37,239 nt of DNA, taken from assembly GCA_002269645.1 (NCBI GenBank), contig NIVC01003551.1, forward strand, positions 1-37,239, written 5' to 3'. The notes under the pieces are model-generated. The model worked only from the letters and a program-made list of their open reading frames with translations, did not search any database and was not told the DNA's origin. The stretch comes from Macrostomum lignano. Lineage: Eukaryota. Below, one piece after another: positions 9,855 to 35,145 of this stretch. The position numbers and the translations under genes are program-made. Within the stretch, counting starts at the first letter, position 1. Each line of letters opens with the position of its first letter.

Positions 9855-10512
9855 CCCTAGAGAACGCCCGTTGCTTGGCGGCCTCTTATTTCTAAGAAAA
9901 CCGAGTGCGATGTAATTAATTTGTTCAATGGTGCTACAGCGGTCCTGACTTTCTTCTTTCGTCGGGCATGTACACACTCCCTGTCGCTTGAGAGTTGACG
10001 TATACTAAACCTTCAATTGAAAAATAGCTTGAAAGCAAGCAATACACTTGCAACAATTATCAGTTAACCGACTCTGCTCTCGTCTTTAAACTCAAAAAAG
10101 GCGGCATCTTTCAAGCGAGTTTTATTTTCCGCACCAACGGCAGGAGCCTTCGCCAAAAAATACAATGCTGAAAATAATTTGCACTATTCCGAAATTAATA
10201 TGTATTAATTAAAAAAAGTTCAAATGGCCGTGCAGTCTCAGCACCAACGCAAAGACAGTGAATGACTGAAACAACTTGAAAAATGTATGCAGGTAACAGA
10301 GAGCACAAATGCTGCTAAAGCACTGCTGGGTGGCAATTACGTAGGGACATAGAGCATTAGGCAAAATAGTTCTGCAAATCAGAGTTGCCAACACATTTAG
10401 GATAATTAATCAATTTCTTGATTCTAAAATGTGCACAGTAAAATCAGATTGGAACAGCAGAGACGGAATCAACAGAGCCTTAGGGGATGGCCCGGCAACT
10501 GAGCATCTGAAA

Positions 10513-10913
10513 GGGGGTCAATCTGAGGATCTGACAGGGGTCAATTTGAGTATCTGACAGGGGGTCAATCTGAGGATCTGACAGGGGGTCAATTTGAGGA
10601 TCTGATAGGGGGTCAATTTGAGGATCTGACAGAGGGTCAATTTGAGGATCTGACAGGGGGTCAATCTGAGGATCTGACAGAGGGTCAATCTGACGATCTG
10701 ACAGGGGGGGGTCAATTTGAGGATCTGACAGGGGGGTCAATTTGAGGATCTGACAGGGGGGTCAATTTGAGGATCTGACAGGGAGGTCAAATTGAGTATT
10801 TGACAGGGGGTCAATCTGAGGATCTGACAGAGGGTCAATCTGACGATCTGACAGGGGGGTCAATTTGAGGATCTGACAGGGGGGTCAATTTGAGAATCTG
10901 ACAGGGGGTCAAT
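10513..10913. repeat. Minisatellite, ~24-26 bp unit (GGGGTCAATTTGAGGATCTGACAG), ~16 copies
   Basis: Direct tandem repetition. Confidence 0.95.
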
Positions 10914-10948: not shown

Positions 10949-13145
10949 TCAGAAAGTCCTAGCGCACTCGATACCCTCGTCAATGCTGCCGAATCGCCGC
11001 ATTCCCCGAACGCCGATTCCACCGACGCCGGCGCCACTAATTGCTGGCGCGGCGCGTAGAAAATGGCGCCTGGCGGGCGGATCTTGCGCCATCTTGGGCT
11101 GCCTGACTGCGTAGGCGGCCAGGCCCAACAGAATAGCGGCATAGGACACAAAGTACAGCGGGTGAAAGCTGTAGCCAAACAGGTAAACGCCGACAAACAG
11201 GGCGTACAGGTCGGCTGTGAGCAGGGACAGATTGACCAACACTGCGCTGCCAGTTGTCATGGCAACCGGCATCAGAGAGTACAGAGCGTACATGCACAGC
11301 GCGAAGCCTACAGCGGCGCCGATTGCAGCGGCTGGAGACGCGCCGGGCGCCAGGCGGCCAGCCAGCAGGTGGCCGAGCTCGCGCCGCTCCAGCAGCAGCA
11401 GCTGAACTCCGCCAACCAGAGCGCCAAGGATGCCGACGCAGCCGATGTACAGCAGGCGCTCGTACCGCCGGACCAGGTGCTCCTGCCAGACATTCGACAG
11501 GCCGTACAGGGCGCCACCAGCCAATACGAGGGCGTCGCCGAGCAGCGGCGCTGGCGGTGCAGAATCGCCGGCGTGCTGAGCTGCCAGAACGTCAGCCAGG
11601 GCCATGCCACCAGCGCCGAGGACGCAGGCGGCAACGCCGACGTAGTGGCAGGCCTTGAACCTGGCGCCCAGGAGGAACCACGAGCTGATGAGGGCTACCG
11701 GGATGCTGGCGCAGTCGAGCAGCTGCACGCTGGTCACGCTGGTGTAGGCGTAGGCCTGGGATGGGGGTTCGATTGTTGATGATTGGATGATTGCGTAGGC
11801 TTGCTCAGCCGGAAGTGAAGGCAAATGTGTGGAGTGTGTGAGGCAACCGGAAGTATAATGTGAAGCAACCATAAGGGGATGTGAGGCAACCGGAAGTGGA
11901 GTGTGGGGCAACCGGAGGTGGAGTGTGGGGCAACCGGAGGTGGAGTGTGAGGCAACCGGAGGTAGAGTGCAGGGCAACCGGAGGTGGAGTGTGGGGCAAC
12001 CGGAGGTGGAGTGTGGGGCAACCGGAATTGGAGTGTGGGGCAACCGGAGGTGGAGTGTGGGGCAACCGGAGGTGGTGTGGGGCAACCGGAAGTATAACGT
12101 GAAGCAACCAGAAGGGGATGTGAGGCAACCGGAAGTGGAGTGTGGGGCAACCGGAAGTGAAGACAAATGTGTGGAGTGTGTGAGGCAACCAGAAGTGGAG
12201 TGTGGGGCAACGGGAAATGGAGTGTGGGGCAACCGGAGGTGGAGTGTGGGGCAACCGGAGGTGGTGTGGGGCAACCGGAGGTAGTGTGGGGCAACCGGAA
12301 GTGGAGTGTGAGGCAACCGGAAGTGGAGTGTGGGGCAACCGGAGGTGGTGTGTGGGGCAACCGAAGGTAGAGTGTGAGGCAACCGGAGGTGGTGTGTGGG
12401 GCAACCGGAGGTGGAGTGTGAGGCAACCGGAGGTGGAGTGTGAGGCAACCGGAGGTGGAGTGTGGGGCAACCGGAGGTGGAGTGGGGGGCAACCGGAGGT
12501 GGAGTGTGAGACAACCGGTGGTGTTAGGCATTCGAAAGTGGGGTGCTGGCAAGTAAAATCTTAGGTAACCTACGGCTAAATTGAAACAAAGGAAACCCTT
12601 TACTTTACTTTGGAAGCGAGGCACATGTAACCGGAAGTGTGACGAGCAAGGCTCACCTTAACCACAAGAAAGTTGGCCTCAACGTCCATCAGAGCGGCCA
12701 GCAGGTATCTCCACCAGAGGCGTCGAGCGGCGGCGCGCAGGCTGGCGGCCCGGCCGAGCCGGTAGAACGCCACGGAGCCAAAGGTAAGGCCCAGCAGCAG
12801 GTAGTTAAGAAAGCACTGAGAAGTCGGCGCGTTCACGCCGAACCGTTGCAAATAGCCGGATGTTACTGCCGTGCCGCAGATGAACAGCGACAGCAGCTGG
12901 CCGAGCGCCAGCGACACCAGCAGCCGGCGAGTTGTCGGTCGGTCGCCGCCACAGCAGCGGCTGGCCCAGTCTGGCGATGCTGCCTCATCAGCAGCTGGCT
13001 GGGCAGCAGAGTCCACAGCTGGCATTGGCGAGGCCTCCTTGCTGTTGTGCACCACTGGCGGCCCGAACGGACTGTCGAATTCGTCGACGCGCCCGACGGC
13101 GTCAGCGGCCGATGCGGTTGCCTGAAGGCGCCGTTGCCGCTGCAT
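10949..13145 (-). CDS. SLC35F2: Solute carrier family 35 member F1/F2-like transporter (exons 13145-12657, 11755-10949; ~431 aa)
   Basis: Family motifs GQLLSLFICGT, APTSQCFLNY, DVEANFLVVK|AYAYTSVTSVQLLDC, GDALVLAGGALYGLSNVWQE, VNLSLLTADLY. Donor AAG|GTGAGC and acceptor CCCAG|GCC, phase 0. The start codon and F1 versus F2 paralogy are uncertain. Confidence 0.9.
11806..12520. repeat. Intronic minisatellite, 18/21-bp unit (GGCAACCGGA[G/A]GTGGAGTGTG[G/A])
   Basis: Tandem array inside the SLC35F intron 11756-12656; explains the several Pro/His-rich ORFs here. Confidence 0.95.
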
Positions 13146-13216: not shown

Positions 13217-14260
13217 GCCCTAGGGGGAATCTCCATCACAACCCTATGGGGAATATCCATCACAACCCTATGGGGAATCTCCATCACAACCCTATGGGGA
13301 ATATCCATCACAACCCTATGGGGAATCTCCATCACAACCCTATGGGGAATATCCATCACAACCCTACAGGGAATCTCCCTCACAACCCTACAGGGAATCT
13401 CCCTCACAACCCTACGGGGAATCTCCCTCACAACCCTACAGGGAATCTCCCTCACAACCCTATGGGGAATCTCCATCACAACCCTAGGGGGAATCTCCAT
13501 CACAACCCTATGGGGAATCTCCATCACAACCCTATGGGGAATCTCCATCACAACCCTATGGGGAATCTCCATCACAACCCTAGGGGGAATCTCCATCACA
13601 ACCCTATGGGGAATCTCCATCACAACCCTATGGGGAATCTCCATCACAACCCTATGGGGAATCTCCATCACAACCCTAGGGGGAATCTCCCTCACAACCA
13701 TACAGGGAATCTACCTCACAACCCTACAGGGAATCTCCATCACAACCCTATGGGGAATCTCCATCACAACCCTATGGGGAATCTCCATCACAACCCTATG
13801 GGGAATCTCCCTCACAACCCTAGGGGGAATCTCCCTCACAACCATACAGGGAATCTCCCTCACAACCCTACAGGGAATCTCCATCACAACCCTATGGGGA
13901 ATCTCCATCACAACCCTATGGGGAATCTCCATCACAACCCTATGGGGAATCTCCATCACAACCCTAGGGGGAATCTCCATCACAACACTAGGGGGAATTC
14001 CATCACAACCCTATGGGGAATCTCCCACAAAACCCTATGGAAAATTTCCCACAAAACCCTATGGGGAATCTCCCTCACAACCCTATGGGGAATCTCCCTC
14101 ACAACCATACAGGGAATCTCCCTCACAACCATACAGGGAATCTCCATCACAACCCTACAGGGAATCTCCATCACAACCCTATGGGGAATCTCCCTCACAA
14201 CCATACAGGGAATCTCCCTCACAACCCTATGGGGAATCTGCTACAAAACTCTATAGGGAA
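13217..14260. repeat. Minisatellite, 24-bp unit (CCCTATGGGGAATCTCCATCACAA), ~43 copies, degenerating at the 3' end
   Basis: Direct tandem repetition; the NPMGNLHH repeat ORF is a by-product. Confidence 0.95.
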
Positions 14261-14744
14261 TCTCCCAGACAACCAATACAGAATCGCCCTTTAACTAGCT
14301 CAACAAAAGTTTCTGAAGATAACAAGCCTGATCTGATACAATAATGTGATAAGAACGTGATTAGATATATTTGTTATTAATATTGTCAAAACTGGTTCAT
14401 ATTTACAGCTAAACTGCCCATGCAGTTCTCCAGCATACAGAATACTAACACAGGCTAGCAAATTTCAATTTTAAGCCGCAAAAAACACAACACAGATAAA
14501 TGCCATGAGAAAAGGGGGTTATTTAAGTGAATAAACTAAATCTAGTATCTATGGAGACAACAAGTTACAAAATTTAGTCAAGTATTGTTATTATCTATAA
14601 GTTGTAAATATTTTACAGAAGTTTTAACACAAAACGAGATTAGTAAGCTTTAATTTGATCAACAAGAACTCCGTAGGGAAGAGTTGAATGAAGAGATATT
14701 ATTAATTCAGTGTCGCTGCTTCCGTGACTTTCTAATAATAAATC

Positions 14745-14957
14745 CAGTGATTGTATACCCAAACCAGTGACTTTCTACCCGACTCAGTGACTTTCTACCC
14801 GACTCAGTGACTTTCTACCCGACTCAGTGACTTTCTACCCGACTCAGTGACTTTCTACCGGACTCAGTGACTTTCTACCCGACTCAGTGACTTTCTACCG
14901 GACTCAGTGACTTTCTACCCGACTCAGTGACTTTCTAACCGACTCAGTGACTTTCTC
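14745..14957. repeat. Minisatellite, 20-bp unit (CAGTGACTTTCTACCCGACT), ~10 copies
   Basis: Direct tandem repetition. Confidence 0.9.
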
Positions 14958-15098: not shown

Positions 15099-15923
15099 TC
15101 AGAATCGAACACCCTCCAGCCGCAGCAGCAGGCTGTCTACTTCTTCAGCCTCAGCGTCGGCCGGTTCAGTCGACGAAGCTGCCGGCGCGGCAGTTGGGGT
15201 TTCTGGGGCCGACGCAGAAGCCACTCGCCGTGGAGGCGTCGGCGGCGACTGTCGCTCCTGGATTGTCAGGCAGGTGCGCAGCAGCGACCGGGCGTCCCTG
15301 TAGGCCTGCAGCAGCGAGGCGGTGTCTCCGGACAGGGTGAAAGCTCGCTTAGCCCGGGCCAGGCCGTCCCTGGCCAGAGCCACGGGACTGCGGCCCAGGT
15401 CCGCTTGGGTGGCGCCGGCGGCCAGGTAGCGGCCGACGAGGTCCAGCCGGCCTGTGACGGCCGCCAGCCTGGCTGGCGTGTTGCCAACGCAGTCCACTCG
15501 GCTGGGATCGGCACCGCAGGCGAGCAGACAGTCCACTAACTCACTGTCGCCCCTAGCCGAGGCGATGTGCAACGGTGTTCGACCTTTTTTATCCGCAACA
15601 TTCGGCGGCGCCCCGGCTTCGAGTAGGCGCCGAACACGCGCCGTTGAGTGGCGCCGATTGACGGCCTCGATGAGCTCCTGGCCCAGGCGGGCGCGGAACC
15701 GGGCGCGCCTCGGGCCGATCCGGGCGCCGCCTCTGTCCGCCGCTGACGACGGTGCCGACGCCGCCTTGCCAAGCAGGTGGCGCTGCTGGAAGACGCCGAA
15801 ACCGCGCCGGAACTCGTCCGGCACAGTTAGCGCCAATGGCGGCGCCTGCGGCAACAGCGGCGGAGGCGGCGGCGTGACCGGAGGCGATTCGCCAAGGACG
15901 CTGGCGCTGGTGGCAGCGGCCAT
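15099..15923 (-). CDS. ANKRD54: ANKRD54 (LIAR)-like ankyrin repeat protein, single coding exon (~274 aa)
   Basis: VRRLLEAGAPPNVADKKGRTPLHIAS, GADPSRVDCVGNTPARLAA and C-terminal EEVDSLLLRLEGV match the ANKRD54 layout. An acceptor-like TTTCGCTCTCCAG at ~15950 precedes the ATG at 15923. Confidence 0.75.
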   Translation of the reverse strand: MAAATSASVLGESPPVTPPPPPLLPQAPPLALTVPDEFRRGFGVFQQRHLLGKAASAPSSAADRGGARIGPRRARFRARLGQELIEAVNRRHSTARVRRLLEAGAPPNVADKKGRTPLHIASARGDSELVDCLLACGADPSRVDCVGNTPARLAAVTGRLDLVGRYLAAGATQADLGRSPVALARDGLARAKRAFTLSGDTASLLQAYRDARSLLRTCLTIQERQSPPTPPRRVASASAPETPTAAPAASSTEPADAEAEEVDSLLLRLEGVRF

Positions 15924-16060
15924 CACTGCCGAGGGTGAAGCTGTGTGGGCTGGAGAGCGAAATACCATCAATTTTTTTAAAACAAAGCGATCGGTCAGAC
16001 GAATGGGCGAAGTTCACTGACACTTGCAATTATTTTAAACAGACCTATGGTCACATACAC

Positions 16061-21904: not shown

Positions 21905-22234
21905 TCAGCAGTCATCTCCCAGTCCAATGTCGTGCGTGTCGACAAACTTCCATAGCAGGTCCAGCACCTCCTGCTTGAGCTCCTTCGGCACCCGCTCTCT
22001 GGCCTGCGGCAGCACCGCCTCGACAATTTCCTCCACAGTGCAGTACTCGACCCCTTTGGCTCGGATGAGATCTCGGCACTGGCTTTTCACTTCTTCCATC
22101 CAGCCCGAGCTGTTCAGAGCCGCCCGGATGTGGCGCCGGATCCGGTCCTGCTCGCCGGAGGCCTGCAGCTTGGCTTCGATTTTACTGCGAACTTCGTCGC
22201 ATTTCCGGTCGATGTTACGGTCAGATGAGGACAT
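21905..22234 (-). CDS. ENY2: Transcription and mRNA export factor ENY2/Sus1 (109 aa, single coding exon)
   Basis: IEAKLQASGEQDRIRRHIRAALNSSGWMEEVKSQCRDLIRAKG..TVEEIVEAVLPQARERVPKELKQEVL matches the ENY2 consensus. Confidence 0.9.
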   Translation of the reverse strand: MSSSDRNIDRKCDEVRSKIEAKLQASGEQDRIRRHIRAALNSSGWMEEVKSQCRDLIRAKGVEYCTVEEIVEAVLPQARERVPKELKQEVLDLLWKFVDTHDIGLGDDC

Positions 22235-23114
22235 GATGACGGCAGCAAGTTGAGCACGCTGGCTTGAGTTCTCGTTCAACTAATGCAGCGATGAGAGTAT
22301 TTTATGTAGCTAGCTGCTTTCAGATCATAAGATCGTAGCGGCCTGGTCCCCCGGGTTTGGGCCATAGAGTTGCTCCTAAAGTGTGGAGTAGTTAACACTC
22401 GACACAAGCTCGATAAGAGTCCTTTCACCCTGGGGCAATTAAATACGTAAAATTCACGGTTTCTTGTACTTCTTGTACAACAAGCCACTCGCCTGGATAA
22501 ACGAAGTTACAAGGGGGTAATAACTCACAATGGCTTGTACACTTTGCATGTTCGAATTGGCAGATTTCATTTTATTTGTCAACTTGTCTGCAGTATAGTT
22601 GCAATTTGTGTTCGATATCAAACCTACAGTATATTGCTCGTAGTAAAATATTACAATTTAAAGACTTAGACGAACGTGGATCTACAGAGAACTTAACCTA
22701 AAACACAAAATAACAAATTTAGCATGCAAATTAAACTATCGCAAACATCGTTTCTTAGGCGTAAAATAGCGGGTAGATCAGATGGAGTAAACAGATGGCG
22801 GACAAAATGTCCGATTAGAAGATAATTAGTAATTTTAAGTAGTAATTTTCTGAGGCCTGACAGTCTCCTTTGCGAAATTAATTCTAGATTGCCACTATAG
22901 CAAAGGTCTTCTGATATAAGCCACAGCACCTGAACTGTCAATACATGCAAGTCTGGCCGACGTTCGACGTCGATGACAGATACACTGTATGACGCGTTAT
23001 CAGTCGATGTATAATGCAAATCTAATGAAAAACTGGCAGAACAAAAAATTCATCGTTTCCCAAATTTATGGTTCCAAATTTTAGTAGAAGCTACAAATGA
23101 GACACTTTCAGGTC

Positions 23115-23907
23115 CTACATGTCCTCCTCAGTATTAACCCTTACATCTGTTACTATATCCAGGTAGCACTTCTTTGTCAGGGTCGAGCAGTACTCGGATA
23201 CAACAATATCATCGAACCCATGCCGAGCTGAAGATTGAGCCTTCATTAGTCTGCAGTTTACATTGGCCATAATGTCCGTCAGATGATCGTGACGAAACCG
23301 GTCACAAATGACGTCGCAGAATGTCTGTACGAACAGTGAGCCATTATACCGATCCCGATGGGCTGTTTCGCCCTTAGTGCTTGAATGGCAGACCAGAAAA
23401 TCTTTTTTATAAGGGCTGAATCTGGAATCTTCCGCGCGATTTGGTGAAAAGCGCGACTCGTCAGCTTTCAATCCACGACACGCTTGAATAATGAAAATCT
23501 TTGGCTTGTTGAGCAGACTGGTGCAGTGAACAGGGTACAGAGGCCGCATAATTGATTCTAAGCCTACGGATTCTCCATCACTTCCATAGACTTCCCCACT
23601 AGAGCCGTGAGCCATGATGACGCACACAAAGCAGCCGAGGTTGGAACGGCCAAATTCAACTGAAGCCGCGTGAACTTGTTCCGGCATCTCCTGACTAGTT
23701 GGATTTTCCGCCAACTGGACATCAAAAGCCATCTTTGAGAACAGTGTTGATAGCCTATCTACGTCCAAGCGAGATCCTTCCCGATCCTCAAGGAGTGACC
23801 TCCTGTCATACTTTTCAACGTTGATTATTAGACAAACACCCCGTCGCGGAGACGTCACTGGGTATCGGTCGTCATCTTCAGCGGTTCTGCAATAGCGATT
23901 TGTTATA
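23115..23907 (-). CDS. Caspase (peptidase C14) domain exon of the ANK-kinase-caspase gene
   Basis: RGVCLIIN..REGSRLDVDRL..CFVCVIMAHG..GSDG..NKPKIFIIQACRG..DFLVCHSS..HRDRYNGSLFVQ; catalytic His and Cys are intact. Confidence 0.92.
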
Positions 23908-26900
23908 CTGGTGATGCAAATAAATCAAATATACTTTTAGTCAGTCAGGGACCAACCTCTGAGACGCAACGGCTCCGGGGTTATTCAATATGCTGCCTTC
24001 AGAGCTGCCACTTGGCCCGCCTGGACCGCCTCCGTTATTAGAATCGGCTCCTCTGGGATCATTTGTGCCATCTCCGTAGCCTGCATTTGGCCTGCGCTTG
24101 CAGTCGCCTCCGTCTGGACCGCTGCCTTTCTCATTGTCATCGTCATTGTCATTCTGACTTTTTACGGCCAAATGGTCAGAATCTAAAATGTTGTTATTTC
24201 GTTTGGATGAAATGATTGTCATCAGTTTCCCAATTAATATCTGTACGAGAAGTAGGGCCTAAACTATATAGTCAGCTAGTGACAGCTACTGATGAGTATG
24301 AGTTTAATAGTCTGCGATCGCAAGAGAAACTTTGAGTACAACCGCAAATTAGGATAAAAGTAGATCTTAACACACGCAGGTACACCCTGAGAGCTTTCAG
24401 CGGCCCGGACACTCTCGTCATCAGGTATGACGTGTTTTAGCGCTTTGCTACTCACACCCATCCCCTTAGTAAACTAAAGGTTTGCTATACTAAAATATTT
24501 AAATTGATCCAACAACTTAATCTGCACTCACTGCACACGATAAATGGATGCTTGAGCAGCTCAGCTGACGACTTTCGAGTTTTGTAATTCTTGTCTGTAC
24601 AGAAGCGGTAAAAATCTATCATGTTGATGTCGCATGTCTCCGGTGAACTCGCCAGTGAAGGAGCGCCGAACGTTGAAATTTTGCTGCCAAGATGCACGAA
24701 GCTTTTTATGTTGTCATACGGCACTCTGCCATTTGCCATGTAGTACACGATGCAACCGAGGGCCCAGACGTCCGTTTTGGGGCAGATTCGACCGGAGCTG
24801 CCGCCTTCCTGGTCGTCTCCGCCGAATCTCTCCGGAGCCAGGAAATGGAGAGTCCCTTTCGGCATCGTGCTGCTCTCCAGGCAGTGCGTGTCGGATTCGC
24901 ACAGCCTGCGAGACAGACCAAAGTCGATAAGCTTCACCAATTTATTTCCATCTATAAGGATGTTGTTGCCGTTGATGTCCCGGTGAACAACACCCATGCT
25001 GTGCATATACTGTAGAGCGCTGCAGATCTGTAAGCAGGGTTTCCACTTGAGAGTTTAAAATGAAATTCTTCTCTAACTTTCAAATCTAGGCAAGTCTCAC
25101 CTGGGTTGTTAGCTTTCGGTTCACTTCGATTTGAACAGGTTCTCCATTAAGAAAATTATTCAGCGTTTTACCGTAGACGCGCTCCATCACAACAGTGATC
25201 TGCAGGCTATCGGCATTGTAGCATATTTCAACAAATTTTGCAATGTTTTCGTGTTTCAGTCCGCACAGATTCAGTTCAGCCTTGATATTGTCTGCGACTT
25301 TGTGATTTCTGACGTCCTTTCCGTCTGTGTCGTGGAAGGGCAAGTTAATGAACTTGGCGCAGTACTCGGTCGGGCTGTTCGGCAGAGTGGCCCGGCAAAC
25401 AGTTCCGAATGCGCCCCGACCGATCTCTTCGCCGAATTTGATGCTCTTCATGACGGACTTGCTGCAAGGGTAAGCTCATTGTGTATTGTGTGTAAGCTCA
25501 ATGCTCAGGGTATGAAAAGCAATTTGATCTTCCAGTTCGCTGGCTGAGGGTCTTCTGTCACCAACTAAACACCAAACAAACTGATTTCGGTTAAGTTAGA
25601 AATGACTAACAAATTTTAAAAAACCATCTGCAATGCAACTCACCATTCCACTTTCGGAACCGTGCTACTCTCCGTTGGTTTTGCTGCTTCTGTTTCCATT
25701 GCTACTTCACCAGCTGCCACCGGCGTCTCTTTTGCTTGCATTGCAGCAGCTGCATTAAGTGCATCCAGCTTGCTGTTCAGATCAAGCCTTGAGCCTTCTT
25801 GCTGCTTAATACCGCTGTTACCTGGAGCACGAACCGGCAGAGTCGGACGGTTGTTAAAAGACCTCATTGTAGGCAGAGTTGCAGAGTCTGCGCTAGCCAG
25901 AAGCCTGAAAAAGAGGGCATTTCATCATCCGTGAAAACAGCATCGTGGCTCGTAATGGCTTGTAACAGATCAAAGAGCAAATTTCTCACGGGTGAACTCG
26001 CAGTTTCTCCTTGAAGAATGATTTATCCGCGAACCTTGGGGCGTCATTTAGCGAGTCTAGGTGTTGTAGTAAAATAGAAAAATTGCAGCACACAAAAAGA
26101 TAACAAATAGAGAGTTCTCACTGGCCCAGCAGTTCGGAGGTCTGCTTGCAGCAGTTCCTATCAGCATAGTACAGCGCGGTGCTCCCGTTGTTGTCTCGCA
26201 TCTCCCAGTTGGCGCCAAGCCGAAGCAGCGCCCTGACGCTGTCCACGTGGTCGCGGCTGGCCGCCTGCATGAGGGCCGTCCAGTTGCGGTGGTCGCCGCA
26301 GTTCACGGCCGCCCCGGAGTTGGCGAGCGCCCACATGGCGCCCTCCCAGCCGGCTGCGGCGGCCGAGTGCAGACTGCTCCAGCCGTTGGCGTCAGGCGCC
26401 GTGGGGTCGCCAAGACCTGCCAGGAGCTTCAGCACCTCAAGGCCGGCTGACTTGCACTCGGAGACTCGCATCAGCGCAGTCTTGCCGGCACCGTCGGGCA
26501 AGTCGCAGTTGGCGCTGGTGGCCAGCAGCTTGAGCTCGGCGAGATTGCCAGCAAGGGCGAGCTGCTCCAGCTGTATGCGAATTCGCTCTTGCTGGAAGGT
26601 ACGTATATTTAGACAATTATTGGGGATTAAGGACTTTAGACGCTTGCCACAGGCTCAAGCACTGAGCACACAAGATCATGTTTACGCTCGCATGTGCCTC
26701 GAATCGTCATTGTCACGCAAGTGTGTAATGACAATTAATGGCAACTCCCAAATTGACATTTTGACGTGTCCGCTTGGCACCACGATTTTTAAAAGTACAA
26801 ACTATAGCTGTTCATTAGTCTAAGGATGCTAAATTAATCTGCAAGCAAGTTTTTGAACACTCACCTGGGGCGTCAGGCCGTTCTCAAGTAACTTCAGTTC

Positions 26901-28319
26901 ACTAAAATGATCGGTGTACAAGTATTTATCAAACTGTTTTAACATTTAAAAATCGGATTCTTTATATTATATACTGCCTCACTCACGCCTCAATTATCTT
27001 GGCCAACTCGTGCCAGCCGCACTCCTCAGCCATGTCCAGCGCCGTCCGACCTTCCGAGTTATTTTTGCACAGAACTGCCTGCCAGTTGCTGGCCAGGTGT
27101 GTCTGCCTGAACAGGTGCATCAAGTGCTTCGCGCAGCGGGTCTTCCCGGATTGGGCGGCCTCCATAAATGGCGTGAGTCCCTTGTTGTTGGTCTGGAATT
27201 TGATTTCAGCCGGGAGCAGAGCCAGCAACATCAAGTTGCCATGCCGGGCGGCCAGATGGGCGAGGCTGTCCCCGTTCTCATCGGCACTGTGAAGCTCGCA
27301 AGCTGACCGGTCAATCAGCAGCTCGAAGCTCTTGGCGCAGTTCGCGCGCAGACCACCGGGAGTCCCGGCGCATTCAGCCAGGACCGCCCTGCAGTCTGAC
27401 GGGGTCAGGTCCTCCTTGGCTACGAGATCCAACAGCAGACCGTAGTTTCCCTCCTTCAGCTTCTCTGCGATCTCGCTGGTCTGGGACTGAAGCAAATAGG
27501 GTTTTTTAAACACGTGGTTAATAATAGGGCATCTGTATCACAGGTATGCAGCAGTTTTCTGAGATCCGGACTGATACAAAATCCCCTGGGTTAACACCTA
27601 TAAACAGGTGCCATTCCCACCCATGGGTAGTCAAACTCGAAGCTATGGAATGTGTGCGATGCCTAACGACGAGAGTGAGGACCTACGTACTCTAGATGCA
27701 TGAATCTCTCTCATGACATGTGCCTGCATTTGCATCCGATTGAGTGATCATGTAATCCCTCTAGCTCTGAATGCTATACCAACCAATGCGAGTGCTCTAA
27801 CCAGCGGGAGATTCGGTCTGAGTCTCAACCAATTGGGAGCAGTAGTGTGCTAAGGAAATATATTCAATGCGAAAGACTTTGGGGAAAATACTAGAAATAA
27901 ACCCTTGTAAAATTCAAGCAAGAAACTTGGCTATCCCTTCACCCCCTCGCCTCATAGCAATCTCTGCTGGCTCTTTGAGATCAGCCGAACTATAAATTGA
28001 CTCAGCGAATCTTGAAAAATAGGTGGACTTAAAATTTTATTCAAATCCTCAGAGCGCGATCCCAAAACATTCGGAAGATTCTTACTCGAAATTCTCCACT
28101 TTATAACACCATTTTCTGCAAGTGTAACATCTCCGTGATCGAATCATCACGAAAAGTCAGTCGATCGGCTCATCAATATATAGACAAGAGCCACAGAAAT
28201 GAGACCCAAAAATATGATATGCCTCCATCCATGCGAGTGATTGATCCACTCCATACTAAAACCAGTGCAATATCCATTTAATATCCATTTAATTATCAAC
28301 TTACCAACGGATCCGGCAT
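23115..28319 (-). CDS. Ankyrin repeat - Ser/Thr kinase - caspase multidomain protein (9 exons, ~1052 aa)
   Basis: Exons 28319-28305, 27486-26987, 26901-26865, 26591-26122, 25904-25644, 25461-25101, 25027-24532, 24182-23957, 23907-23115. All introns are GT-AG with matching phases (0,2,0,2,2,0,1,2); total 3159 nt in one frame. The kinase-to-caspase linker junctions are the least certain. Confidence 0.75.
24532..25461 (-). CDS. Protein kinase domain exons (STE/MAP3K-like) of the ANK-kinase-caspase gene
   Basis: IGRGAFGTV, YCAKF, LKHENIAKF, HRDINGNNIL, KLIDFGL, GTLHFLAPE, DVWALGC, ELLKHPFI; 73-nt intron 25100-25028. Confidence 0.92.
26122..27486 (-). CDS. Ankyrin-repeat exons of the ANK-kinase-caspase gene
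   Basis: DENGDSLAHLAA, NNKGLTPFMEAA, NSEGRTALDMA, DGAGKTALMR, DANGWSSLHSAA, DHRNWTALMQAA, DNNGSTALYYA: about seven repeats in two blocks joined through a 37-nt microexon. Confidence 0.88.
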
Positions 28320-29056: not shown

Positions 29057-29847
29057 TTAGCGGCTGTGGCCCAGCAACTGGGGATCTGGGAGGCTGGCCC
29101 AGCAACTGGGGATCTGGAAGGCCGGCCCAGCAGTTGGGGATCTGGGAGGCTGGCCCAGCAACTGACCTTCTGGAAGGCTGGCCCAGCAACTGACCTTCTG
29201 GAAGGCTGGCCCAGCAACTGAGGATCTGGGGGGTTGGCCCAGCAACTGACACTCTGGGAGGCTGGCCCAGCAACTGAGAATCTGGGAGGCTGGCCCAGCA
29301 ACAGGGGATCTGGGAGGCTGGCCCAGCAACTGGGAATCTGGGAGGTTGCATGGCCCAACAAGTGAGGATCTGAGAGGCTGGCCCAGCAACTGGGGATCTG
29401 GGAGGCTGGCCCAGCAACTGACATCCTGGGAGGCTGGCCCAACAACTGACACTCTGGGAGGCTGGCCCAGCAACTGAAGATCTGGGAGGCTGGCCCAGCA
29501 ACTGACACTCTGGGAGGCTGGCCCAGCAACTGACACTCTGGGAGGTTGGCCCAGCAACTGGGAATCTGAGAGGCTGGCCCAGCAACTGACCTTCTGGAAG
29601 GCTGGCCCAGCAACTGAGGATCTGGGAGGTTGGCCCAGCAACTGAGGATCTGGGAGGCTGGCCCAGCAACTGAGAATCTGGGAGGCTGGCCCAGCAACTG
29701 AGAATCTGGGAGGCTGGCCCAGCAACTGAGGATCTGGGAGGCTGTTCCAGCAACTGGGGATTTGGGAGGCTGGCTCAGCAACCTAGGATCTGGGAGGCTG
29801 GCTCAGCAACTGAGGATTTTGGAGGTTTAACCAGCAACTGAGGATGA
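29057..29847. repeat. Minisatellite, 28-bp unit (GAGGATCTGGGAGGCTGGCCCAGCAACT), ~28 copies
   Basis: Direct tandem repetition; all three minus frames are open with the same 28-aa periodic text. Confidence 0.95.
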
Positions 29848-30627: not shown

Positions 30628-32102
30628 TCAGTGCTTGAGAGTCTGCCTCTCCGCTCTCCCTCAGTGCCTGAAAATCTGCCTCTCCGCTCTCCCTCAGTGC
30701 CTGAAAATCTGCCTCTTCGCTCTCCCTTAGTGCCTGAGAACCTGCCTCTCCGCTCTCCCTCAGTGCTTGAGAACCTGCCTCTCCGCTCTCCCTCAGTGCT
30801 TGAGAATCTGCCTCTCCGCTCTCCCTCATTGCTTGAGAATCTGCTCTGCTCTCCCTCAGTGCTTGAGAATCTGCCTCTCCGCTCTCCATCAGTGCTTGAG
30901 AATCTGCCTCTCCCTCAGTGCCTGAGAATCTGCCTCTGCTCTCCCTCAGTGCTTGAGAATCTGCCTCTCCGCTCTCCCTCAGTGCTTGAGAATCTGCCTC
31001 TGCTCTCCCTCAGTGCTTGAGAATCTGCCTCTGCTCTCCCTCAGTGCTTGAGAATCTGCCTCTGCTCTCCCTCAGTGCTTGAGAATCTGCCTCTCCCTCA
31101 GTGCCTGAGAATCTGCCTCTCCGCTCTCCCTTAGTGCCTGAGAATCTGCCTCTCCGCTCTCCCTCAGTGCTTGAGAATCTGCCTCTTCGCTCTCCCTCAG
31201 TGCCTGAGAATCTGCCTCTTCGCTCTCCCTCAGTGCCTGAGAATCTGCTTCTCCGCTCTCCCTCAGTGCCTGAGAATCTGCCTCTCCGCTCTCCCTCAGT
31301 GCTTGAGAATCTGCCTCTCCATCAGTGCTTGAGAATCTGCTTCTCCCTCAGTGCCTGAGAATCTGCCTTTCCGCTCTCCCTCAGTGCCTGAGAATCTGCC
31401 TCTTCGCTCTCCCTCAGTGCCTGAGAATCTGCCTCTTCGCTCTCCCTCAGTGCCTGAGAATCTGCTTCTCCGCTCTCCCTCAGTGCCTGAGAATCTGCCT
31501 CTCCGCTCTCCCTCAGTGCTTGAGAATCTGCCTCTCCATCAGTGCTTGAGAATCTGCTTCTCCCTCAGTGCCTGAGAATCTGCCTTTCCGCTCTCCCTCA
31601 GTGCCTGAGAATCTGCCTCTTCGCTCTCCCTCAGTGCCTGAGAATCTGCCTCTTCGCTCTCCCTCAGTGCCTGAGAATCTGCTTCTCCGCTCTCCCTCAG
31701 TGCCTGAGAATCTGCCTCTCCGCTCTCCCTCAGTGCTTGAGAATCTGCCTCTCCATCAGTGCTTGAGAATCTGCTTCTCCCTCAGTGCCTGAGAATCTGC
31801 CTTTCCGCTCTCCCTCAGTGCCTGAGAATCTGCCTCTCCGCTCTCCCTTAGTGCCTGAGAATCTGCCTCTCCGCTCTCCCTCAGTGCCTGAGAATCTGCC
31901 TTTCCGCTCTCCCTCAGTGCCTGAGAATCTGCCTCTTCGCTCTCCCTCAGTGCCTGAGAATCTGCCTTTCCGCTCTCCCTCAGTGCCTGAGAATCTGCCT
32001 TTCCGCTCTCCCTCAGTGCTTGAGAATCTGCCTTTCCGCTCTCCCTCAGTGCTTGAGAATCTGCCTTTCCGCTCTCCCTAAGTGCTTGAGAATCTGCCTC
32101 TC
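30628..32102. repeat. Minisatellite, 33-bp unit (GAGAATCTGCCTCTCCGCTCTCCCTCAGTGCCT) with 26-bp variants and a 217-bp higher-order repeat
   Basis: Direct tandem repetition; identical ORFs recur at 31351/31568 and 31325/31542, with a third matching start at 31785. Confidence 0.95.
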
Positions 32103-32924
32103 CACCTTCCCTCCGAAATTAATGAAATTTCAGAAATTAATGAAATCCACAAGCGCACGACAGCCGCAATGTAAATTTCAAGATGCCGACAGAAATCTGC
32201 AAGAGAAAGAAGACAATAGCAGACTTGCAGAGTGTATTTGGGATTCCAACTCGGTGTTTATACAAGTGCACAGTGGGTCAAGCGAGCTGGCAGAACAAAG
32301 ACCTACTGATAATTATTTGTTTAAAAAACGCGGGCAGATCAGTAATCCTTAATCAATAAGCTTGTAAGCGAAAGAGGGAACAATCTATCAGAGAGAATCG
32401 AAATTGCGTACAGAACAAGACACACAAGCGACACCAAGTTTTCAATCCAATACGGAGACCTACAAAATGATGCACCGGACACCAAAGATTAATAAAACCA
32501 AAATCAACAGAGAACTATAATATTCAATTTAGTTAATTTTATAATAATTTCAATATTGGCAACTGGGAAACGCAAACAAACAAATGTGTGGGGTACAGGC
32601 TGACAAATACAAACAAATTGTATTTGTAAAGTAGATTGCATCAATTTATAGTGAGTCAACGTGCACTTACTCAGATTCTGAGTTAAATTATAAAGTACTT
32701 TTCCCCAGTCCAAGTAGGGAAACTATTTAGGCTTTGGATAGGCCCCAGTCTGTTTGAAAATTTATAAAATGAGTTAGCAAAAGAAAAATCATTCCAGCCG
32801 AAGAAAGATACGATTAAACTACTTGCAAAACTGTAATAAATTGTTTTGTCGATTTTGTACTACTTAAAACAGGTACTAAGAGTAGTAGCGAACGAGCAGA
32901 GTTATCTAGAAGCCACACGAGAAG

Positions 32925-35145
32925 CTAATCAGACGGCGCCTTCTCAACAGCGAACGGCTGGTCAACAGGCAGCGAGCCGCAGTCGGCGATGACCACATCC
33001 TGGGATGGCCGGTCATTCTGGTTAGTTGGGGTGGTCTCGATCGTCCTGACCACGCTCATGCCCTCCAGCACTTTGCCGAATACAACGTGCCGCCCGTCCA
33101 GCCACTGGGTCTTGGCCACGGTGATGAAGAACTGGCTGCCGTTTGTGTCCGGGCCAGCGTTGGCCATGGAGCACCAGCCGGCGCCGTAATGCTTCAGCTT
33201 GAAGTTCTCGTCCTTGAACTTCTCGCCATAGATGGACTTGCCTCCGGTGCCGTCGCCTTTAGTGAAATCGCCGCCCTGAATCATGAAGCCCTTGATGACG
33301 CGGTGAAACTTGGACCCCTTGTAGCCCATGCTGCCGCCAGACTCCTGGGGCACGCCCTCCGCCAGCGACTTGAAATTCTTAACAGTTTTTGGCACGCTGC
33401 CGCCAAACAGGCCGATGACGATGCGGCCAGCTGGCTTCCCACCGATGGTGATGTCGAAGAACACCTGGGAGCGAAGGTTTATTTAGATCAGGGTCCGGCA
33501 AACTTTTCTCAAAAGCCAGATAAAGAACCTAGCTAATGGCTGTGGGCCAGATGAGAGAGGAAAGGAGAGGGAAGGAACAGGAGGTAAGAGAGTTGAGATT
33601 TGAGAAGAGACCTCAAACAGGCCAGACTGCTATTGTAAAGTTTCAAAGGACCCAAAAGCTGGATAGAGGCTTTTCAACTCCTGATTTCAATACAAAATTA
33701 GCAAGCCACACACAGCAAGGCATTTGAAAATTTAATGAGAGCTAAAGCAGGATTAGATGGCAAAGCTTTCTGCCTATTATTCCATTGACTCCTGGCCTAT
33801 ACACAAGCTGTATAGCACTAAAGCAGCCTTAAATTTCAAATTGTCATGCATATAGGCTTACACTTTCTATAGGGGTTGAACCTTATATGTGAATTGCATG
33901 GCATTCCCAAGCCAATTATGGGTGCTAGATATAGGCTATTTACCTGGATGATTTTATTCTTGATCATAAAATAACTACACAGAAAATCTAGCTAAAATAT
34001 CTATAAACTTTTACTTAAAGTACTATAATAGTTAATGTTCCACTGCAACTATGACTATAGCTATAAATACGAGTATAGCCTTGTCCAAGTCTAATGGTAG
34101 AATGGCCCCATTATAAGCCTAGTCAAAAACTAAAATACTATTAGCTATATATTAAAAATATTAGACTTGGACATAAACTATTACTTTTATATTATATAAT
34201 AAATGTTTTATGTTCCTTATATAACTTAAAAGTAAGTTAAGATTGTTAAATAGATGTAAGTACACTGAAATATATTCCCACGCACACGTGACACCTTCCT
34301 GAGTGTGGGACTGCCCCGCTCCCCCTACTTTAAAAATACTAGATCCGCCACTGTTATAACTTATATTATAAGAGGTTGAATCCCAAAACCAATAGATTTT
34401 GAACCTAATAAACTTCAATCCCTAAAACAATTTAAATATAAATCTAGAAGTAAAGATAAATTTCCATCATTCTTGGGATTCAAAATAGCTTTCTTTCAGA
34501 ACTAGGCCTAAACAATGTAAAAAGTATATGCAATAGGTTTATGTAATAATAGAGTTCTTATATAATAAAAATTAATAATACCAAATTAAATAACAAAGTA
34601 AAAGTCTATTGGCATTAGTATGCATAGGCAAACTTTGGCCTTTAGCTGCTTCTTTATCTCTTAGGTCCTTGGAAACTTTTTTCTCTTCTGTTTTTAGAAG
34701 ACAATAACATATTTTGCAAAATATAGTTTTGCATGAATAAATTATTTTTATAGAAAATAATCATTTTTTAAGTAACCTTTTAAAGCTTAGTAAGAAACAA
34801 TAGATTTTAGGGAGAAACTAGGCCTATAACATGTTATTAGGGGCCTATTTATTGAGTGCCTACTTTTATTTAAACAATATTCTTTTATCTAAATACATTT
34901 ATATTATTAAGCAACTAAACAGGTAAATAACTAATAACCATGCTATCATCAATCATTGACTTAACTTTGTGAACCCAGTGGTCCTTGTATATACTATTAT
35001 GACATAAAATTAAAGTACTTTTTTGTTTATATATTGTTACCTTGTCAGTTACTTTGGGTCCTTTGGCCGATGCACCAGTATGAAAACTACTAAAAAGAAG
35101 CATCATAATGACGCAAAGACCAAGTGCAGTCGCAATAGTTCGCAT
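32925..35145 (-). CDS. PPIB: Peptidyl-prolyl cis-trans isomerase B (cyclophilin B), exons 35145-35041 and 33464-32925 (214 aa)
   Basis: Signal peptide plus KGPKVTDK|[66 protein letters not shown]; donor AAG|GTAAC and acceptor CCCAG|GTG, phase 0. Confidence 0.95.
33489..33630 (+). mobile_element. hAT-like non-autonomous element, 5' part, inside the PPIB intron
   Basis: Begins CAGGGTCCGGCAAACTTTT after ATTTAGAT; interior GCCAGATA.AGAACC..GA-rich..TGAGAAGAGAC is shared with 9670-9854. Confidence 0.55.

What the first reader, a model, noticed from the sequence alone, without database searches (positions are those of the whole stretch)
23115..28319. Ankyrin-kinase-caspase fusion: sensor, kinase and protease in one polypeptide
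Seen: nine co-oriented exons with canonical GT-AG sites and consistent phases give one ~1052-aa frame, MPDPL | ~7 ANK repeats | linker | kinase | Gly/Asp-rich linker | caspase with AHG and QACRG. No intervening promoter-sized gap or independent ATG context separates the domains; the caspase ORF in the track starts at GTG right after a phase-compatible acceptor. Established: animal caspases normally carry CARD/DED prodomains and kinases such as RIPK1 are recruited in trans; RIPK4/ANKK1 are kinase-ANK and DAPK is kinase-ANK-ROC-DD, none with a protease. I know of no characterised animal ANK-kinase-caspase protein. Inference: a self-contained innate-immunity or cell-death switch in which ANK ligand sensing and kinase dimerisation drive caspase activation.
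Basis: partly seen in the sequence, partly recalled or inferred. Interest (0 to 1): 0.92.

Follow-up and report, generated by a model that had tools for sequence, protein, structure and literature searches.

The report
Flatworm ankyrin-kinase-caspase fusion gene
This is a real, already-annotated gene of the flatworm Macrostomum lignano that joins ankyrin repeats, a protein kinase and an intact caspase in one protein; it belongs to a species-specific family of domain-shuffled caspases noted in print only briefly and never tested.

Summary
On the minus strand, 28319-23115, GT-AG exons give one open frame: about 7 ANK repeats, a linker, a protein kinase, a Gly/Asp/Asn-rich linker and a caspase with AHG and QACRG. 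The window is 100% identical to Macrostomum lignano contig NIVC01003551.1.

A mis-merge of two genes is unlikely:
- The public models derive from RNA-seq and were cut at mapped trans-splice and poly(A) sites.
- All three genomic copies keep the frame and splice sites.
- Copy g3 has no usable stand-alone caspase start.
- A paralogue only ~28% identical keeps the ANK-kinase-(pseudo)caspase order and shares intron positions.

The architecture is not unprecedented. A 2024 paper reports a different M. lignano kinase-caspase (PAA54824.1) and flatworm ANK-caspases. I found further shuffled relatives (ANK-caspase, Roc-caspase, LRAT-caspase, kinase-pseudocaspase-ANK-caspase). The kinase is not RIPK-like, and its catalytic-loop Lys is replaced (HRDINGNN).

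Function is untested. The most likely mechanism is a long-prodomain caspase switched on by ANK- and kinase-mediated clustering and cleavage in a disordered Asp-containing linker. Verdict: real, a moderately interesting new variant of a known kind.

The parts
28305..28319 (-). Exon 1: start codon, MPDPL
   Evidence: GTAAGT donor follows. Same start as PAA50850.1, whose gene range equals 28319-23115.
26987..27486 (-). Exon 2: N-terminal cap and ANK repeats 1-3
   Evidence: CAG acceptor and GTGAGT donor. Pfam Ank_2. AF2 helical solenoid, pLDDT 85-97.
26865..26901 (-). Exon 3: 37-nt exon inside the ANK module
   Evidence: TAG acceptor and GTGAGT donor. The flanking introns sit at the same alignment column and phase in paralogue P0129.
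26122..26591 (-). Exon 4: ANK repeats 4-7
   Evidence: Pfam Ank, Ank_2 and Ank_5 at aa 270-339. 39% identical to the ANK module of the M. lignano ANK-caspase P0283.
25990..26034 (-).
   Evidence: AAG acceptor and GTGAGA donor. Present in PAA47029/50850/59155 and absent from the older 1045-aa UniProt model. The DKSFF motif is conserved in P0283 as GKDFF.
25644..25904 (-). Exon 6: linker 1 (disordered tether)
   Evidence: AF2 pLDDT below 50 for aa 361-443. Absent from P0283 and mostly absent from P0129.
25101..25461 (-). Exon 7: kinase N-lobe (G-loop GRGAFG 25421-25404; Lys in YCAKF 25364-25350; alphaC Glu 25286-25269)
   Evidence: Pkinase 6e-46. Motif coordinates.
24532..25027 (-). Exon 8: kinase C-lobe (HRDINGNN 24985-24962; DFG 24925-24917; APE 24838-24830; ends HPFIVC)
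   Evidence: The catalytic-loop Lys of HRDLKxxN is Asn here, as seen in the alignment to TTK.
24183..24531 (-). Intron 8: the kinase-to-caspase junction intron (read-through stop at 24485; alternative in-frame ATG at 24222)
   Evidence: GT donor and TAG acceptor are conserved in all three copies. It is the most indel-rich segment (indels of 17, 16, 11, 2 and 1 nt), and the ATG is destroyed in g3. An intron falls in the same aligned codon in P0129.
23957..24182 (-). Exon 9: Gly/Asp/Asn-rich linker 2
   Evidence: No indels among the copies despite low complexity. AF2 disordered at aa 729-815. Aligns to the linker of P0283.
23115..23886 (-). Exon 10: caspase p20/p10 and stop (AEDDD 23882-23868; S1 Arg in EDREG 23789-23775; His in MAHG 23615-23604; QACRG 23486-23472; duplicated SRFSP 23456-23442 and 23426-23412; Arg in AHRDR 23363-23349)
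   Evidence: Peptidase_C14 2e-43. 3e-30 to human caspase-6, with catalytic and S1 residues aligned. Coordinates. The inter-subunit loop aa 943-963 is disordered in AF2.

Best explanation
SHOWN: window 28319-23115 (minus strand) is copy g2 of the Macrostomum lignano gene Mlig018903. Its ten exons encode one 1060-aa protein made of three separately folded modules joined by two disordered tethers: an N-terminal solenoid of about 7 ANK repeats, a protein-kinase domain and a C-terminal caspase. The caspase keeps the catalytic His and Cys and the Arg/Gln/Arg S1 pocket for aspartate. The gene belongs to a M. lignano radiation in which one ANK module, one lineage-specific kinase family and caspase or pseudo-caspase domains are recombined at intron boundaries. 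The plain ANK-caspase P0283 is collinear with this protein apart from the linker-kinase cassette (exons 6-8). INFERRED mechanism: it acts as a long-prodomain caspase held inactive as a monomer. The ANK module binds a partner or ligand, and the kinase domain, by dimerising and possibly trans-phosphorylating, brings two caspase domains together. The caspase then cuts itself at Asp residues in the disordered inter-subunit loop (KAD|ESRFSP, AED|SRFSP) and perhaps at AEDDD|R, which would free it from the prodomain. The Ser residues next to those Asp sites are candidate phospho-gates. The paralogue Mlig026099, with the same layout but a dead caspase, would be a FLIP-like partner or regulator. The likely biological role is regulated cell death or innate defence.
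For: Gene identity: the window is 100% identical to NIVC01003551.1, and the 10-exon translation equals PAA50850.1. One transcript: the BOX15 models come from genome-guided RNA-seq assemblies that were cut at experimentally mapped SL trans-splice and poly(A) sites (PMC5730564). A 45-nt micro-exon in the model fits transcript-based evidence. An independent UniProt/WormBase model also fuses the domains. Coding behaviour: among copies g1-g3 every non-triplet indel lies in an intron and exons carry only one 6-nt indel. Overall pN/pS is 0.30-0.44. No separate caspase: g3 lacks the ATG at 24222 and has an in-frame stop upstream of exon 9. Old fusion: paralogue P0129 (~28% identical) has the ANK-kinase-caspase-like order, four introns at identical column and phase, and the junction intron in the same codon. 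Its last exon has a stop 8 codons upstream of the acceptor and no Met before the domain core. Domains: Pfam, caspase residues aligned to caspase-6 and caspase-3, kinase motifs. AF2 gives three confident modules, disordered tethers and a disordered inter-subunit loop, pTM 0.46. Family.
Against: I saw no transcript reads here, so support for the exon 8-9-10 joins is indirect. In this copy, intron 8 offers a read-through stop (24485) and an in-frame ATG (24222), so kinase-only and caspase-only products are conceivable as minor isoforms. The kinase lacks the catalytic-loop Lys (HRDINGNN) and may be a pseudokinase or atypical. The protease domain is most similar to effector caspases-6/3/7, which are normally activated by upstream cleavage, not by proximity. 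pN/pS of the caspase exon in copy g1 is close to 1, though counts are small. No orthologue was found outside M. lignano, so deep conservation cannot be used as evidence. No expression, localisation or phenotype data were found.
Confidence: 0.6

Rival explanations
1. Two gene products. An ANK-kinase mRNA ends shortly after exon 8 (read-through stop at 24485). A separate caspase mRNA, for example the downstream cistron of a trans-spliced polycistronic unit, starts at ATG 24222. The fused model would then be an assembly artefact from pre-mRNA.
For: M. lignano has many trans-spliced genes, and about 7% of assembled transcripts are polycistronic precursors. In copies g2 and g1, an ATG at 24222 lies 20 nt after a CAG and is in frame with exon 9, and an ATTAAA lies in intron 8. 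The kinase domain ends naturally at HPF.
Against: The annotation pipeline specifically cut transcripts at mapped SL and poly(A) sites and did not cut here in any of the three copies. Copy g3 has lost the ATG and has an in-frame stop, yet keeps exons 9 and 10 intact. The distant paralogue P0129 cannot express its caspase-like exon alone and has its junction intron in the same codon. Exon 9 shows coding-type conservation with no indels.
Confidence: 0.07
2. The fusion is real, but the kinase domain is a non-catalytic scaffold (pseudokinase), and the protease is an effector-type caspase activated by cleavage from an upstream caspase. ANK and kinase would then only localise or restrain it and would not sense or activate.
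For: The catalytic-loop Lys is replaced in the whole family (HRDINGNN or HRDINCNN). Related family members have clearly dead kinases: HRQ in P0247 and HRN in PAA54824. The caspase domain is closest to caspases-6/3/7.
Against: All the other core kinase motifs are intact: GxGxxG, the beta3 Lys, the alphaC Glu, the HRD Asp, the Asn, DFG and APE. From general knowledge, several active kinases lack that Lys (haspin, RIO, Bud32). pN/pS of the kinase is about 0.2-0.5, which shows constraint but cannot separate scaffold from enzyme.
Confidence: 0.25
3. Evolutionary by-product. The gene is a recent exon-shuffling chimera in a repeat-rich, hidden-polyploid genome, transcribed but without a selected function.
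For: It is restricted to M. lignano in all searches. Many odd, partly degenerate relatives exist. Constraint on the g1 caspase exon looks relaxed. Copy g3 carries a ~3-kb insertion in intron 9.
Against: Three copies keep a 3.2-kb ORF with all catalytic residues and pN/pS of 0.3-0.44. The architecture has survived divergence down to ~28% identity in the P0129 lineage.
Confidence: 0.08

Closest known systems
M. lignano 'Casp.PK' (PAA54824.1), reported by Horkan et al. 2024, Genome Biol Evol (PMC11463336)
   Same: Same species. A caspase with an intact SHG/QACRG dyad carries kinase-like domains as its pro-domain. It is known only in silico and has not been characterised.
   Different: It is a different gene. 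It has two kinase-like domains with HRN in place of HRD, a Gln-rich linker and no ANK repeats. It is only 27% (caspase) and 29% (kinase) identical to the window protein. The window gene's accessions were not found in the stored part of that paper's supplement.
Flatworm ANK-caspases (Schistosoma, Echinococcus and others; Lee 2014 as cited in PMC11463336)
   Same: N-terminal ANK repeats replace a death-fold prodomain on a C-terminal caspase. M. lignano has such proteins too (P0283 = PAA56209.1), and P0283 is collinear with the window protein.
   Different: The window protein has a linker-kinase cassette between the ANK module and the caspase. Its caspase is only 27% identical to Echinococcus CDS23854, and the ANK modules show no specific similarity. 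The paper states that ANK-caspases are confined to parasitic flatworms, which P0283 contradicts.
RIPK1/RIPK3-caspase-8 complexes (ripoptosome, necrosome) and cFLIP
   Same: Analogy only: a kinase and a caspase cooperate in one death-signalling unit, and a catalytically dead caspase paralogue (here Mlig026099/P0129) could modulate the active one, as cFLIP does.
   Different: In vertebrates these are separate proteins assembled through RHIM, DD and DED domains. Here the link is covalent, there is no death fold or RHIM, and the kinase is not RIPK-like.
RIPK4/ANKK1 and DAPK1
   Same: They combine a protein kinase with ANK repeats, and DAPK1 has a role in cell death.
   Different: The order is kinase then ANK (plus ROC-COR-DD in DAPK1), and none has a protease. 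Here the order is ANK then kinase then caspase, and the kinase belongs to a different group.
Alosa pseudoharengus XP_076138190.1 (predicted PYRIN-kinase-caspase) and Eisenia andrei kinase-caspase (PMC11463336)
   Same: Kinase and caspase are predicted in one animal polypeptide.
   Different: These are independent lineages with other N-terminal modules (PYD). They are predictions only, and the kinase is about 30% identical over a partial match.

Membership tests
Caspase (peptidase family C14A) | Caspase p20/p10 domain recognised by a profile and by similarity to solved caspases | tested here: met
   PF00656 2.1e-43 at aa 804-1029 of the 1045-aa model. Human caspase-6 3e-30, and caspase-3 and caspase-7 about 1e-28. 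AF2 alpha/beta fold with pLDDT 85-95.
Caspase (peptidase family C14A) | Catalytic His-Cys dyad in the (S/A)HG and QACxG motifs | tested here: met
   MAHG (aa 895-898) and QACRG (aa 938-942) align with caspase-6 SHG and QACRG.
Caspase (peptidase family C14A) | S1 pocket Arg, Gln and Arg that give specificity for Asp | tested here: met
   The Arg in EDREG, the Gln of QACRG and the Arg in AHRDR align to the equivalent residues of caspase-6 and caspase-3.
Caspase (peptidase family C14A) | Asp-directed proteolytic activity and autoprocessing in the inter-subunit linker | not testable with these tools
   Only sequence is available. The disordered loop aa 943-963 contains KAD|E and AED|S within a duplicated D-x-SRFSP motif.
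Death-fold initiator or inflammatory caspases (CARD/DED/PYD prodomain) | An N-terminal CARD, DED or PYD domain | tested here: not met
   No death-fold family among the Pfam hits. The prodomain is ANK plus kinase.
Eukaryotic protein kinase, catalytically competent | Pkinase fold with GxGxxG, beta3 Lys, alphaC Glu, HRD Asp, catalytic Asn, DFG and APE | tested here: met
   PF00069 6.3e-46. GRGAFG, YCAKF, IKAELN, HRD..N, DFG and APE are all present.
Eukaryotic protein kinase, catalytically competent | Catalytic-loop Lys of the Ser/Thr kinases (HRDLKxxN), or the Arg of Tyr kinases (HRDLAARN) | tested here: not met
   The loop is HRDINGNN. It aligns to TTK HSDLKPAN with Lys replaced by Asn, and paralogues have HRDINCNN or HRDINCSN. 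Activity is therefore uncertain.
RIP kinases (RIPK1-4, ANKK1) | Kinase domain most similar to RIPKs; RHIM or death domain, or ANK repeats C-terminal to the kinase | tested here: not met
   The best 60 of 2666 PDB kinase hits are TTK, MAP3K2, MAP2K4/6/7, PAK1-3, GCN2, SLK, PLK4 and RAD53, with no RIPK. There is no RHIM or DD, and the ANK repeats are N-terminal.
Flatworm ANK-caspases | ANK-repeat prodomain N-terminal to a caspase in one protein | tested here: met
   The window protein is collinear with the M. lignano ANK-caspase P0283: 39% identity in the ANK module and 32% in linker plus caspase.
Flatworm ANK-caspases | Membership of the monophyletic clade that holds the neodermatan ANK-caspases | tested here: inconclusive
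   27% identity to Echinococcus CDS23854 and no ANK-module hit. The NJ tree is unsupported, with bootstrap 15% for the window's group. The paper places a different paralogue as sister to that clade.
Published M. lignano Casp.PK (PAA54824.1) | Same gene, or a close copy of it | tested here: not met
   27-29% identity and a different architecture.

The most novel reading that the evidence does not exclude
Macrostomum lignano has assembled a cell-death or innate-defence signalling network without death-fold adaptors. It did so by combinatorially shuffling one ANK module, one lineage-specific kinase and caspase or pseudo-caspase domains, together with Roc GTPase and LRAT modules. Within this network, Mlig018903 is a genuine one-polypeptide sensor-kinase-protease whose caspase is gated by its own kinase through phospho-control of the duplicated D-SRFSP cleavage loop. 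The pseudo-caspase paralogue Mlig026099 serves as a built-in FLIP-like regulator.
Probability: 0.2. Interest if true: 0.75.

Novelty: new variant of a known kind. Interest (0 to 1): 0.5.

Why it matters
Caspases are normally recruited to kinases and sensors through death-fold adaptors. A covalent ANK-kinase-caspase would show that the same logic can be hard-wired into one chain, and it gives a simple system for asking how a kinase controls a caspase in cis. M. lignano supports RNAi and transgenesis, so the idea can be tested directly. The analysis also adjusts the published picture:
- ANK-caspases are not confined to parasitic flatworms.
- M. lignano has at least seven distinct multi-domain caspase architectures, not one oddity.
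- Several relatives pair dead kinases or dead caspases with live ones, which suggests regulator/effector pairs.

The interest is tempered. The protein is already in databases, the general phenomenon was published in 2024, no orthologue outside the species was found, and there are no functional data.

Tried and rejected
- A word-indexed homologue search with the caspase domain alone returned only four effector-like caspases at about 30% identity. It was too insensitive to place the domain.
- An NJ tree of caspase domains groups the window protein with the M. lignano Roc-, ANK- and PK-caspases, but bootstrap is 15%, so I do not rely on it.
- Searches for Mlig018903 and Mlig026099 in paper texts and in the held supplements of two M. 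lignano papers found nothing, so there are no expression or trans-splicing data for this gene.
- I considered the operon / separate-caspase model seriously, because of the ATG at 24222, the read-through stop at 24485 and an ATTAAA in intron 8. I rejected it as the main product on the evidence from g3 and P0129.
- A tblastn search of the introns of the plain ANK-caspase gene found no degenerate kinase, so the direction of the change (cassette gain or loss) stays open.
- RIPK homology was considered and rejected.
- An ANK-like peptide I thought I saw in intron 1 (about 27930-28000) was checked only in one reading frame, which contains stops; its own frame was not translated with a tool. It was not pursued.
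- The full-length AF2 model gives no confident inter-domain packing (pTM 0.46), so it says nothing about ANK-kinase-caspase contacts.

Full report
**What is there.** The window is eukaryotic. Pfam finds ankyrin repeats (Ank_2 5e-24, three stretches), a protein kinase domain (PF00069, 6e-46) and a caspase domain (PF00656, 2e-43) in that order. A homology search identifies the organism and the gene. The best hit is the Macrostomum lignano hypothetical protein BOX15_Mlig018903g3, with 98% identity, 100% coverage and the same three Pfam families. Its 90% cluster holds three GenBank copies (g1, g2, g3; 1060-1062 aa) and three UniProt models from an independent annotation (992-1045 aa). The gene region of the window is 100% identical to contig NIVC01003551.1 of assembly GCA_002269645.1, which is copy g2. 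With it the window translates exactly to PAA50850.1, 1060 aa.

The weak point is the 349-nt intron 8 (24531-24183) between the end of the kinase (…HPFIVC) and the low-complexity linker exon. Read-through would stop at 24485. In this copy an ATG at 24222 is in frame with exon 9, so separate ANK-kinase and caspase products are formally possible. M. lignano does have trans-spliced polycistronic units. Five lines of evidence argue for a true fusion.

- The BOX15 models are transcript-derived. They are genome-guided RNA-seq assemblies that the authors cut at experimentally mapped spliced-leader and poly(A) sites (PMC5730564). None of the three copies was cut here, and the model contains a 45-nt micro-exon. 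That these GenBank models are that assembly is my inference from the locus-tag names.
- Among the three copies, every indel that is not a multiple of three lies in an intron. Intron 8 alone carries indels of 17, 16, 11, 2 and 1 nt. The exons, including the repetitive linker exon 9, carry only one 6-nt indel. Splice donors and acceptors are conserved. Overall pN/pS is 0.30-0.44.
- In copy g3 the ATG at 24222 is destroyed and an in-frame stop precedes exon 9. The next Met lies inside the p20 core, so g3 cannot encode a stand-alone caspase, yet it keeps exons 9 and 10 intact.
- A second gene, Mlig026099 (P0129, 902 aa, about 28% identical overall), has the same ANK-kinase-caspase-like order. Four of its introns sit at the same alignment column and phase as in the window gene. 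Its kinase-to-C-terminal-module intron falls in the same aligned codon.
- The caspase-like exon of Mlig026099 has a stop eight codons upstream of its acceptor and no Met before the domain core. It can therefore only be translated as a splice-fusion to the kinase. The fused structure thus predates the divergence of the two genes.

I did not see reads, so this support remains indirect.

**Anatomy of the protein.** AlphaFold2 on the near-identical g3 protein with a paralogue alignment gives three confident modules:

- ANK solenoid, aa 1-355
- kinase, aa 445-728
- caspase, aa 816-1049

They are separated by disordered tethers (aa 361-443 and 729-815), with no confident inter-domain packing (pTM 0.46).

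The caspase domain keeps everything needed for Asp-specific proteolysis. The His (MAHG), the Cys (QACRG) and the S1 Arg/Gln/Arg align with human caspase-6 and caspase-3. These effector caspases are its closest solved relatives (3e-30). The inter-subunit loop (aa 943-963) is predicted disordered. It contains a duplicated motif, KAD-ESRFSP and AED-SRFSP, and an AEDDD run precedes the p20. All of these are plausible autoprocessing sites, by inference.

The kinase has the G-loop, the beta3 Lys, the alphaC Glu, HRD, the catalytic Asn, DFG and APE. Its catalytic loop, however, reads HRDINGNN, so the Lys of HRDLKxxN is Asn, as in all its paralogues. Its closest solved relatives are TTK/Mps1, MAP3K2, MAP2Ks and PAKs (about 1e-24). 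No RIP kinase is among the best 60, and there is no RHIM, DD, CARD, DED or PYD.

**Relatives.** An exhaustive HMMER scan of 1.84 billion representatives with kinase + linker + caspase was followed by local domain splitting, Pfam and name look-ups. It shows that M. lignano holds a family of recombined architectures:

- ANK-kinase-caspase (this gene)
- ANK-kinase-pseudocaspase (Mlig026099; His to Ala, Cys to Leu, S1 Arg to Gln)
- kinase-caspase-like-ANK-caspase (Mlig030125/PAA89054.1; the kinase has HRQ, and the first caspase-like domain has Cys at the His position and His at the Cys position)
- kinase-caspase-ANK (UniProt models)
- ANK-kinase-kinase and ANK-kinase (P0126, P0130)
- plain ANK-caspase (P0283 = PAA56209.1)
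- Ras/Roc-caspase (P0258, P0404)
- LRAT-caspase (P0294)

The window's caspase domain is most similar to the Roc-, LRAT- and ANK-caspases of the same species (41, 37 and 35%). It is less similar to any caspase from another species (33% or less).

P0283 is collinear with the window protein. Its ANK module is 39% identical up to and including the micro-exon motif (DKSFF versus GKDFF). The similarity then resumes at linker 2 plus caspase (32%). What P0283 lacks is exactly linker 1 plus the kinase, which are exons 6-8. Its introns hold no kinase remnant. The simplest reading is gain or loss of an exon cassette between conserved introns.

Outside flatworms, kinase+caspase predictions exist in a fish (Alosa, PYD-kinase-caspase, seven isoforms) and an ostracod (CARD-caspase…kinase).

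**Literature.** Horkan et al. 2024 (PMC11463336) describe ANK-caspases as a clade of parasitic flatworms. [quoted passage not shown] Their supplement shows that this Casp.PK is PAA54824.1. It has two kinase-like domains with HRN, a Gln-rich linker, a caspase and no ANK, and it is only 27-29% identical to the window protein. It is therefore a different paralogue.

The window gene's accessions do not occur in the stored part of that supplement. The paper's table lists no ANK-caspase for M. lignano, although P0283 is one and PAA88208 in the paper's own FASTA begins with ANK repeats. No other paper describing this architecture or this kinase family was found.

**Mechanism (inference).** The protein has the layout of a long-prodomain caspase. 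Such caspases are generally activated when their prodomains cluster them. Here the clustering modules would be the ANK solenoid, by binding a partner or ligand, and the kinase domain, by dimerisation with or without trans-phosphorylation. They are tethered to the protease by about 85 disordered residues. Processing would occur at the Asp residues of the disordered loop. The Ser at P1' and the nearby SP sites in the duplicated D-SRFSP motif could make cleavage phosphorylation-sensitive. The dead-caspase paralogue could heterodimerise with the active one, as cFLIP does with caspase-8.

The alternatives are:

- the kinase is only a scaffold, and the protease is an effector cleaved by another caspase
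- the two halves are expressed separately
- the gene is a neutral chimera

They are weighed in the rival explanations.

**Verdict.** The 'single polypeptide' reading is well supported, though without direct reads. The claim of an unknown architecture is only partly right. This exact ANK+kinase+caspase gene has not been discussed in print, as far as I could find. It is, however, a database entry, its two-way relatives (ANK-caspase and kinase-caspase) were published in 2024, and it is one of many shuffled paralogues in one species. It is a new variant of a known kind, of moderate interest, and experimentally tractable.

Noticed in passing
P0283 (PAA56209.1, locus L005 3001-16295); PAA88208 in the supplement of 10.1101/2023.12.11.571055: The free-living M. 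lignano has plain ANK-caspases, although the 2024 paper states that ANK-caspases are restricted to parasitic flatworms and lists none for this species. In an unsupported NJ tree, PAA88208 pairs with the Echinococcus ANK-caspase.
   Followed up: partly
P0247 (PAA89054.1, Mlig030125g1), aa 16-287, 319-499, 628-722 and 837-1053: Its architecture is kinase, caspase-like domain, ANK, caspase. The kinase has HRQ in place of HRD. The first caspase-like domain has Cys at the His position (GCG) and His at the Cys position (QTHRD), so the dyad looks swapped. The second caspase is intact.
   Followed up: partly
P0258/P0404 (Mlig000293g2, Mlig021837g1) and P0294 (UniProt A0A1I8GH60): These are Ras/Roc-GTPase-caspase and LRAT(NlpC/P60)-caspase fusions in M. 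lignano. Their caspase domains are the closest relatives of the window's caspase (41% and 37%).
   Followed up: partly
P0288 (XP_076138190.1, Alosa pseudoharengus); P0296 (CAG0899406.1, Darwinula stevensoni): A fish protein is predicted as PYRIN-kinase-caspase (seven isoforms), and an ostracod protein as CARD-caspase…kinase. These are independent kinase+caspase predictions in other animals and were not validated.
   Followed up: no
L001 14417-17388 (copy g3, intron 9); ORF at L001 14926-16986: Copy g3 carries a ~3-kb insertion in the 70-nt intron between the linker exon and the caspase exon. It contains a 686-aa ORF with no Pfam hit, possibly a mobile element.
   Followed up: partly
window 23412-23456: A tandem duplicated motif, D-E-SRFSP … E-D-SRFSP, sits in the predicted-disordered inter-subunit loop of the caspase. 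In copy g1 the first unit has diverged (SRFTS).
   Followed up: partly
window 1-811, 1186-1555, 10500-10913, 11829-12518, 13218-14265, 14765-14956, 29067-29845, 30628-32103: There are many long minisatellite arrays (periods 20-33 nt, up to 47 copies) that create spurious long ORFs in several frames. The 11829-12518 array lies on the same strand as, and next to, SLC35F-like coding sequence.
   Followed up: no
window 8119-8364 and 8564-8804: Two 14-nt-period arrays have reverse-complementary units (GAGATTTGCCCGCA versus GCGGGCAAATCTCC) about 200 nt apart, forming a large inverted minisatellite pair.
   Followed up: no
window 32925-33464 (-), 21905-22279 (-), 15099-15971 (-), 12600-13145 (-): The neighbouring genes are a cyclophilin (Pro_isomerase 6e-51), ENY2 (5e-22), a 290-aa ANK-repeat protein and SLC35F-like exons. 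The cyclophilin / 53-aa ORF / fusion gene / ENY2 order is the same at copy g3, with the 53-aa ORF and ENY2 also present at g2 (the window's own contig) and the 53-aa ORF at g1 (contig ends downstream).
   Followed up: partly
window 24222 and 24485 (intron 8): An in-frame ATG and a read-through stop could allow minor caspase-only or kinase-only isoforms in copies g2 and g1. The ATG is lost in g3.
   Followed up: yes
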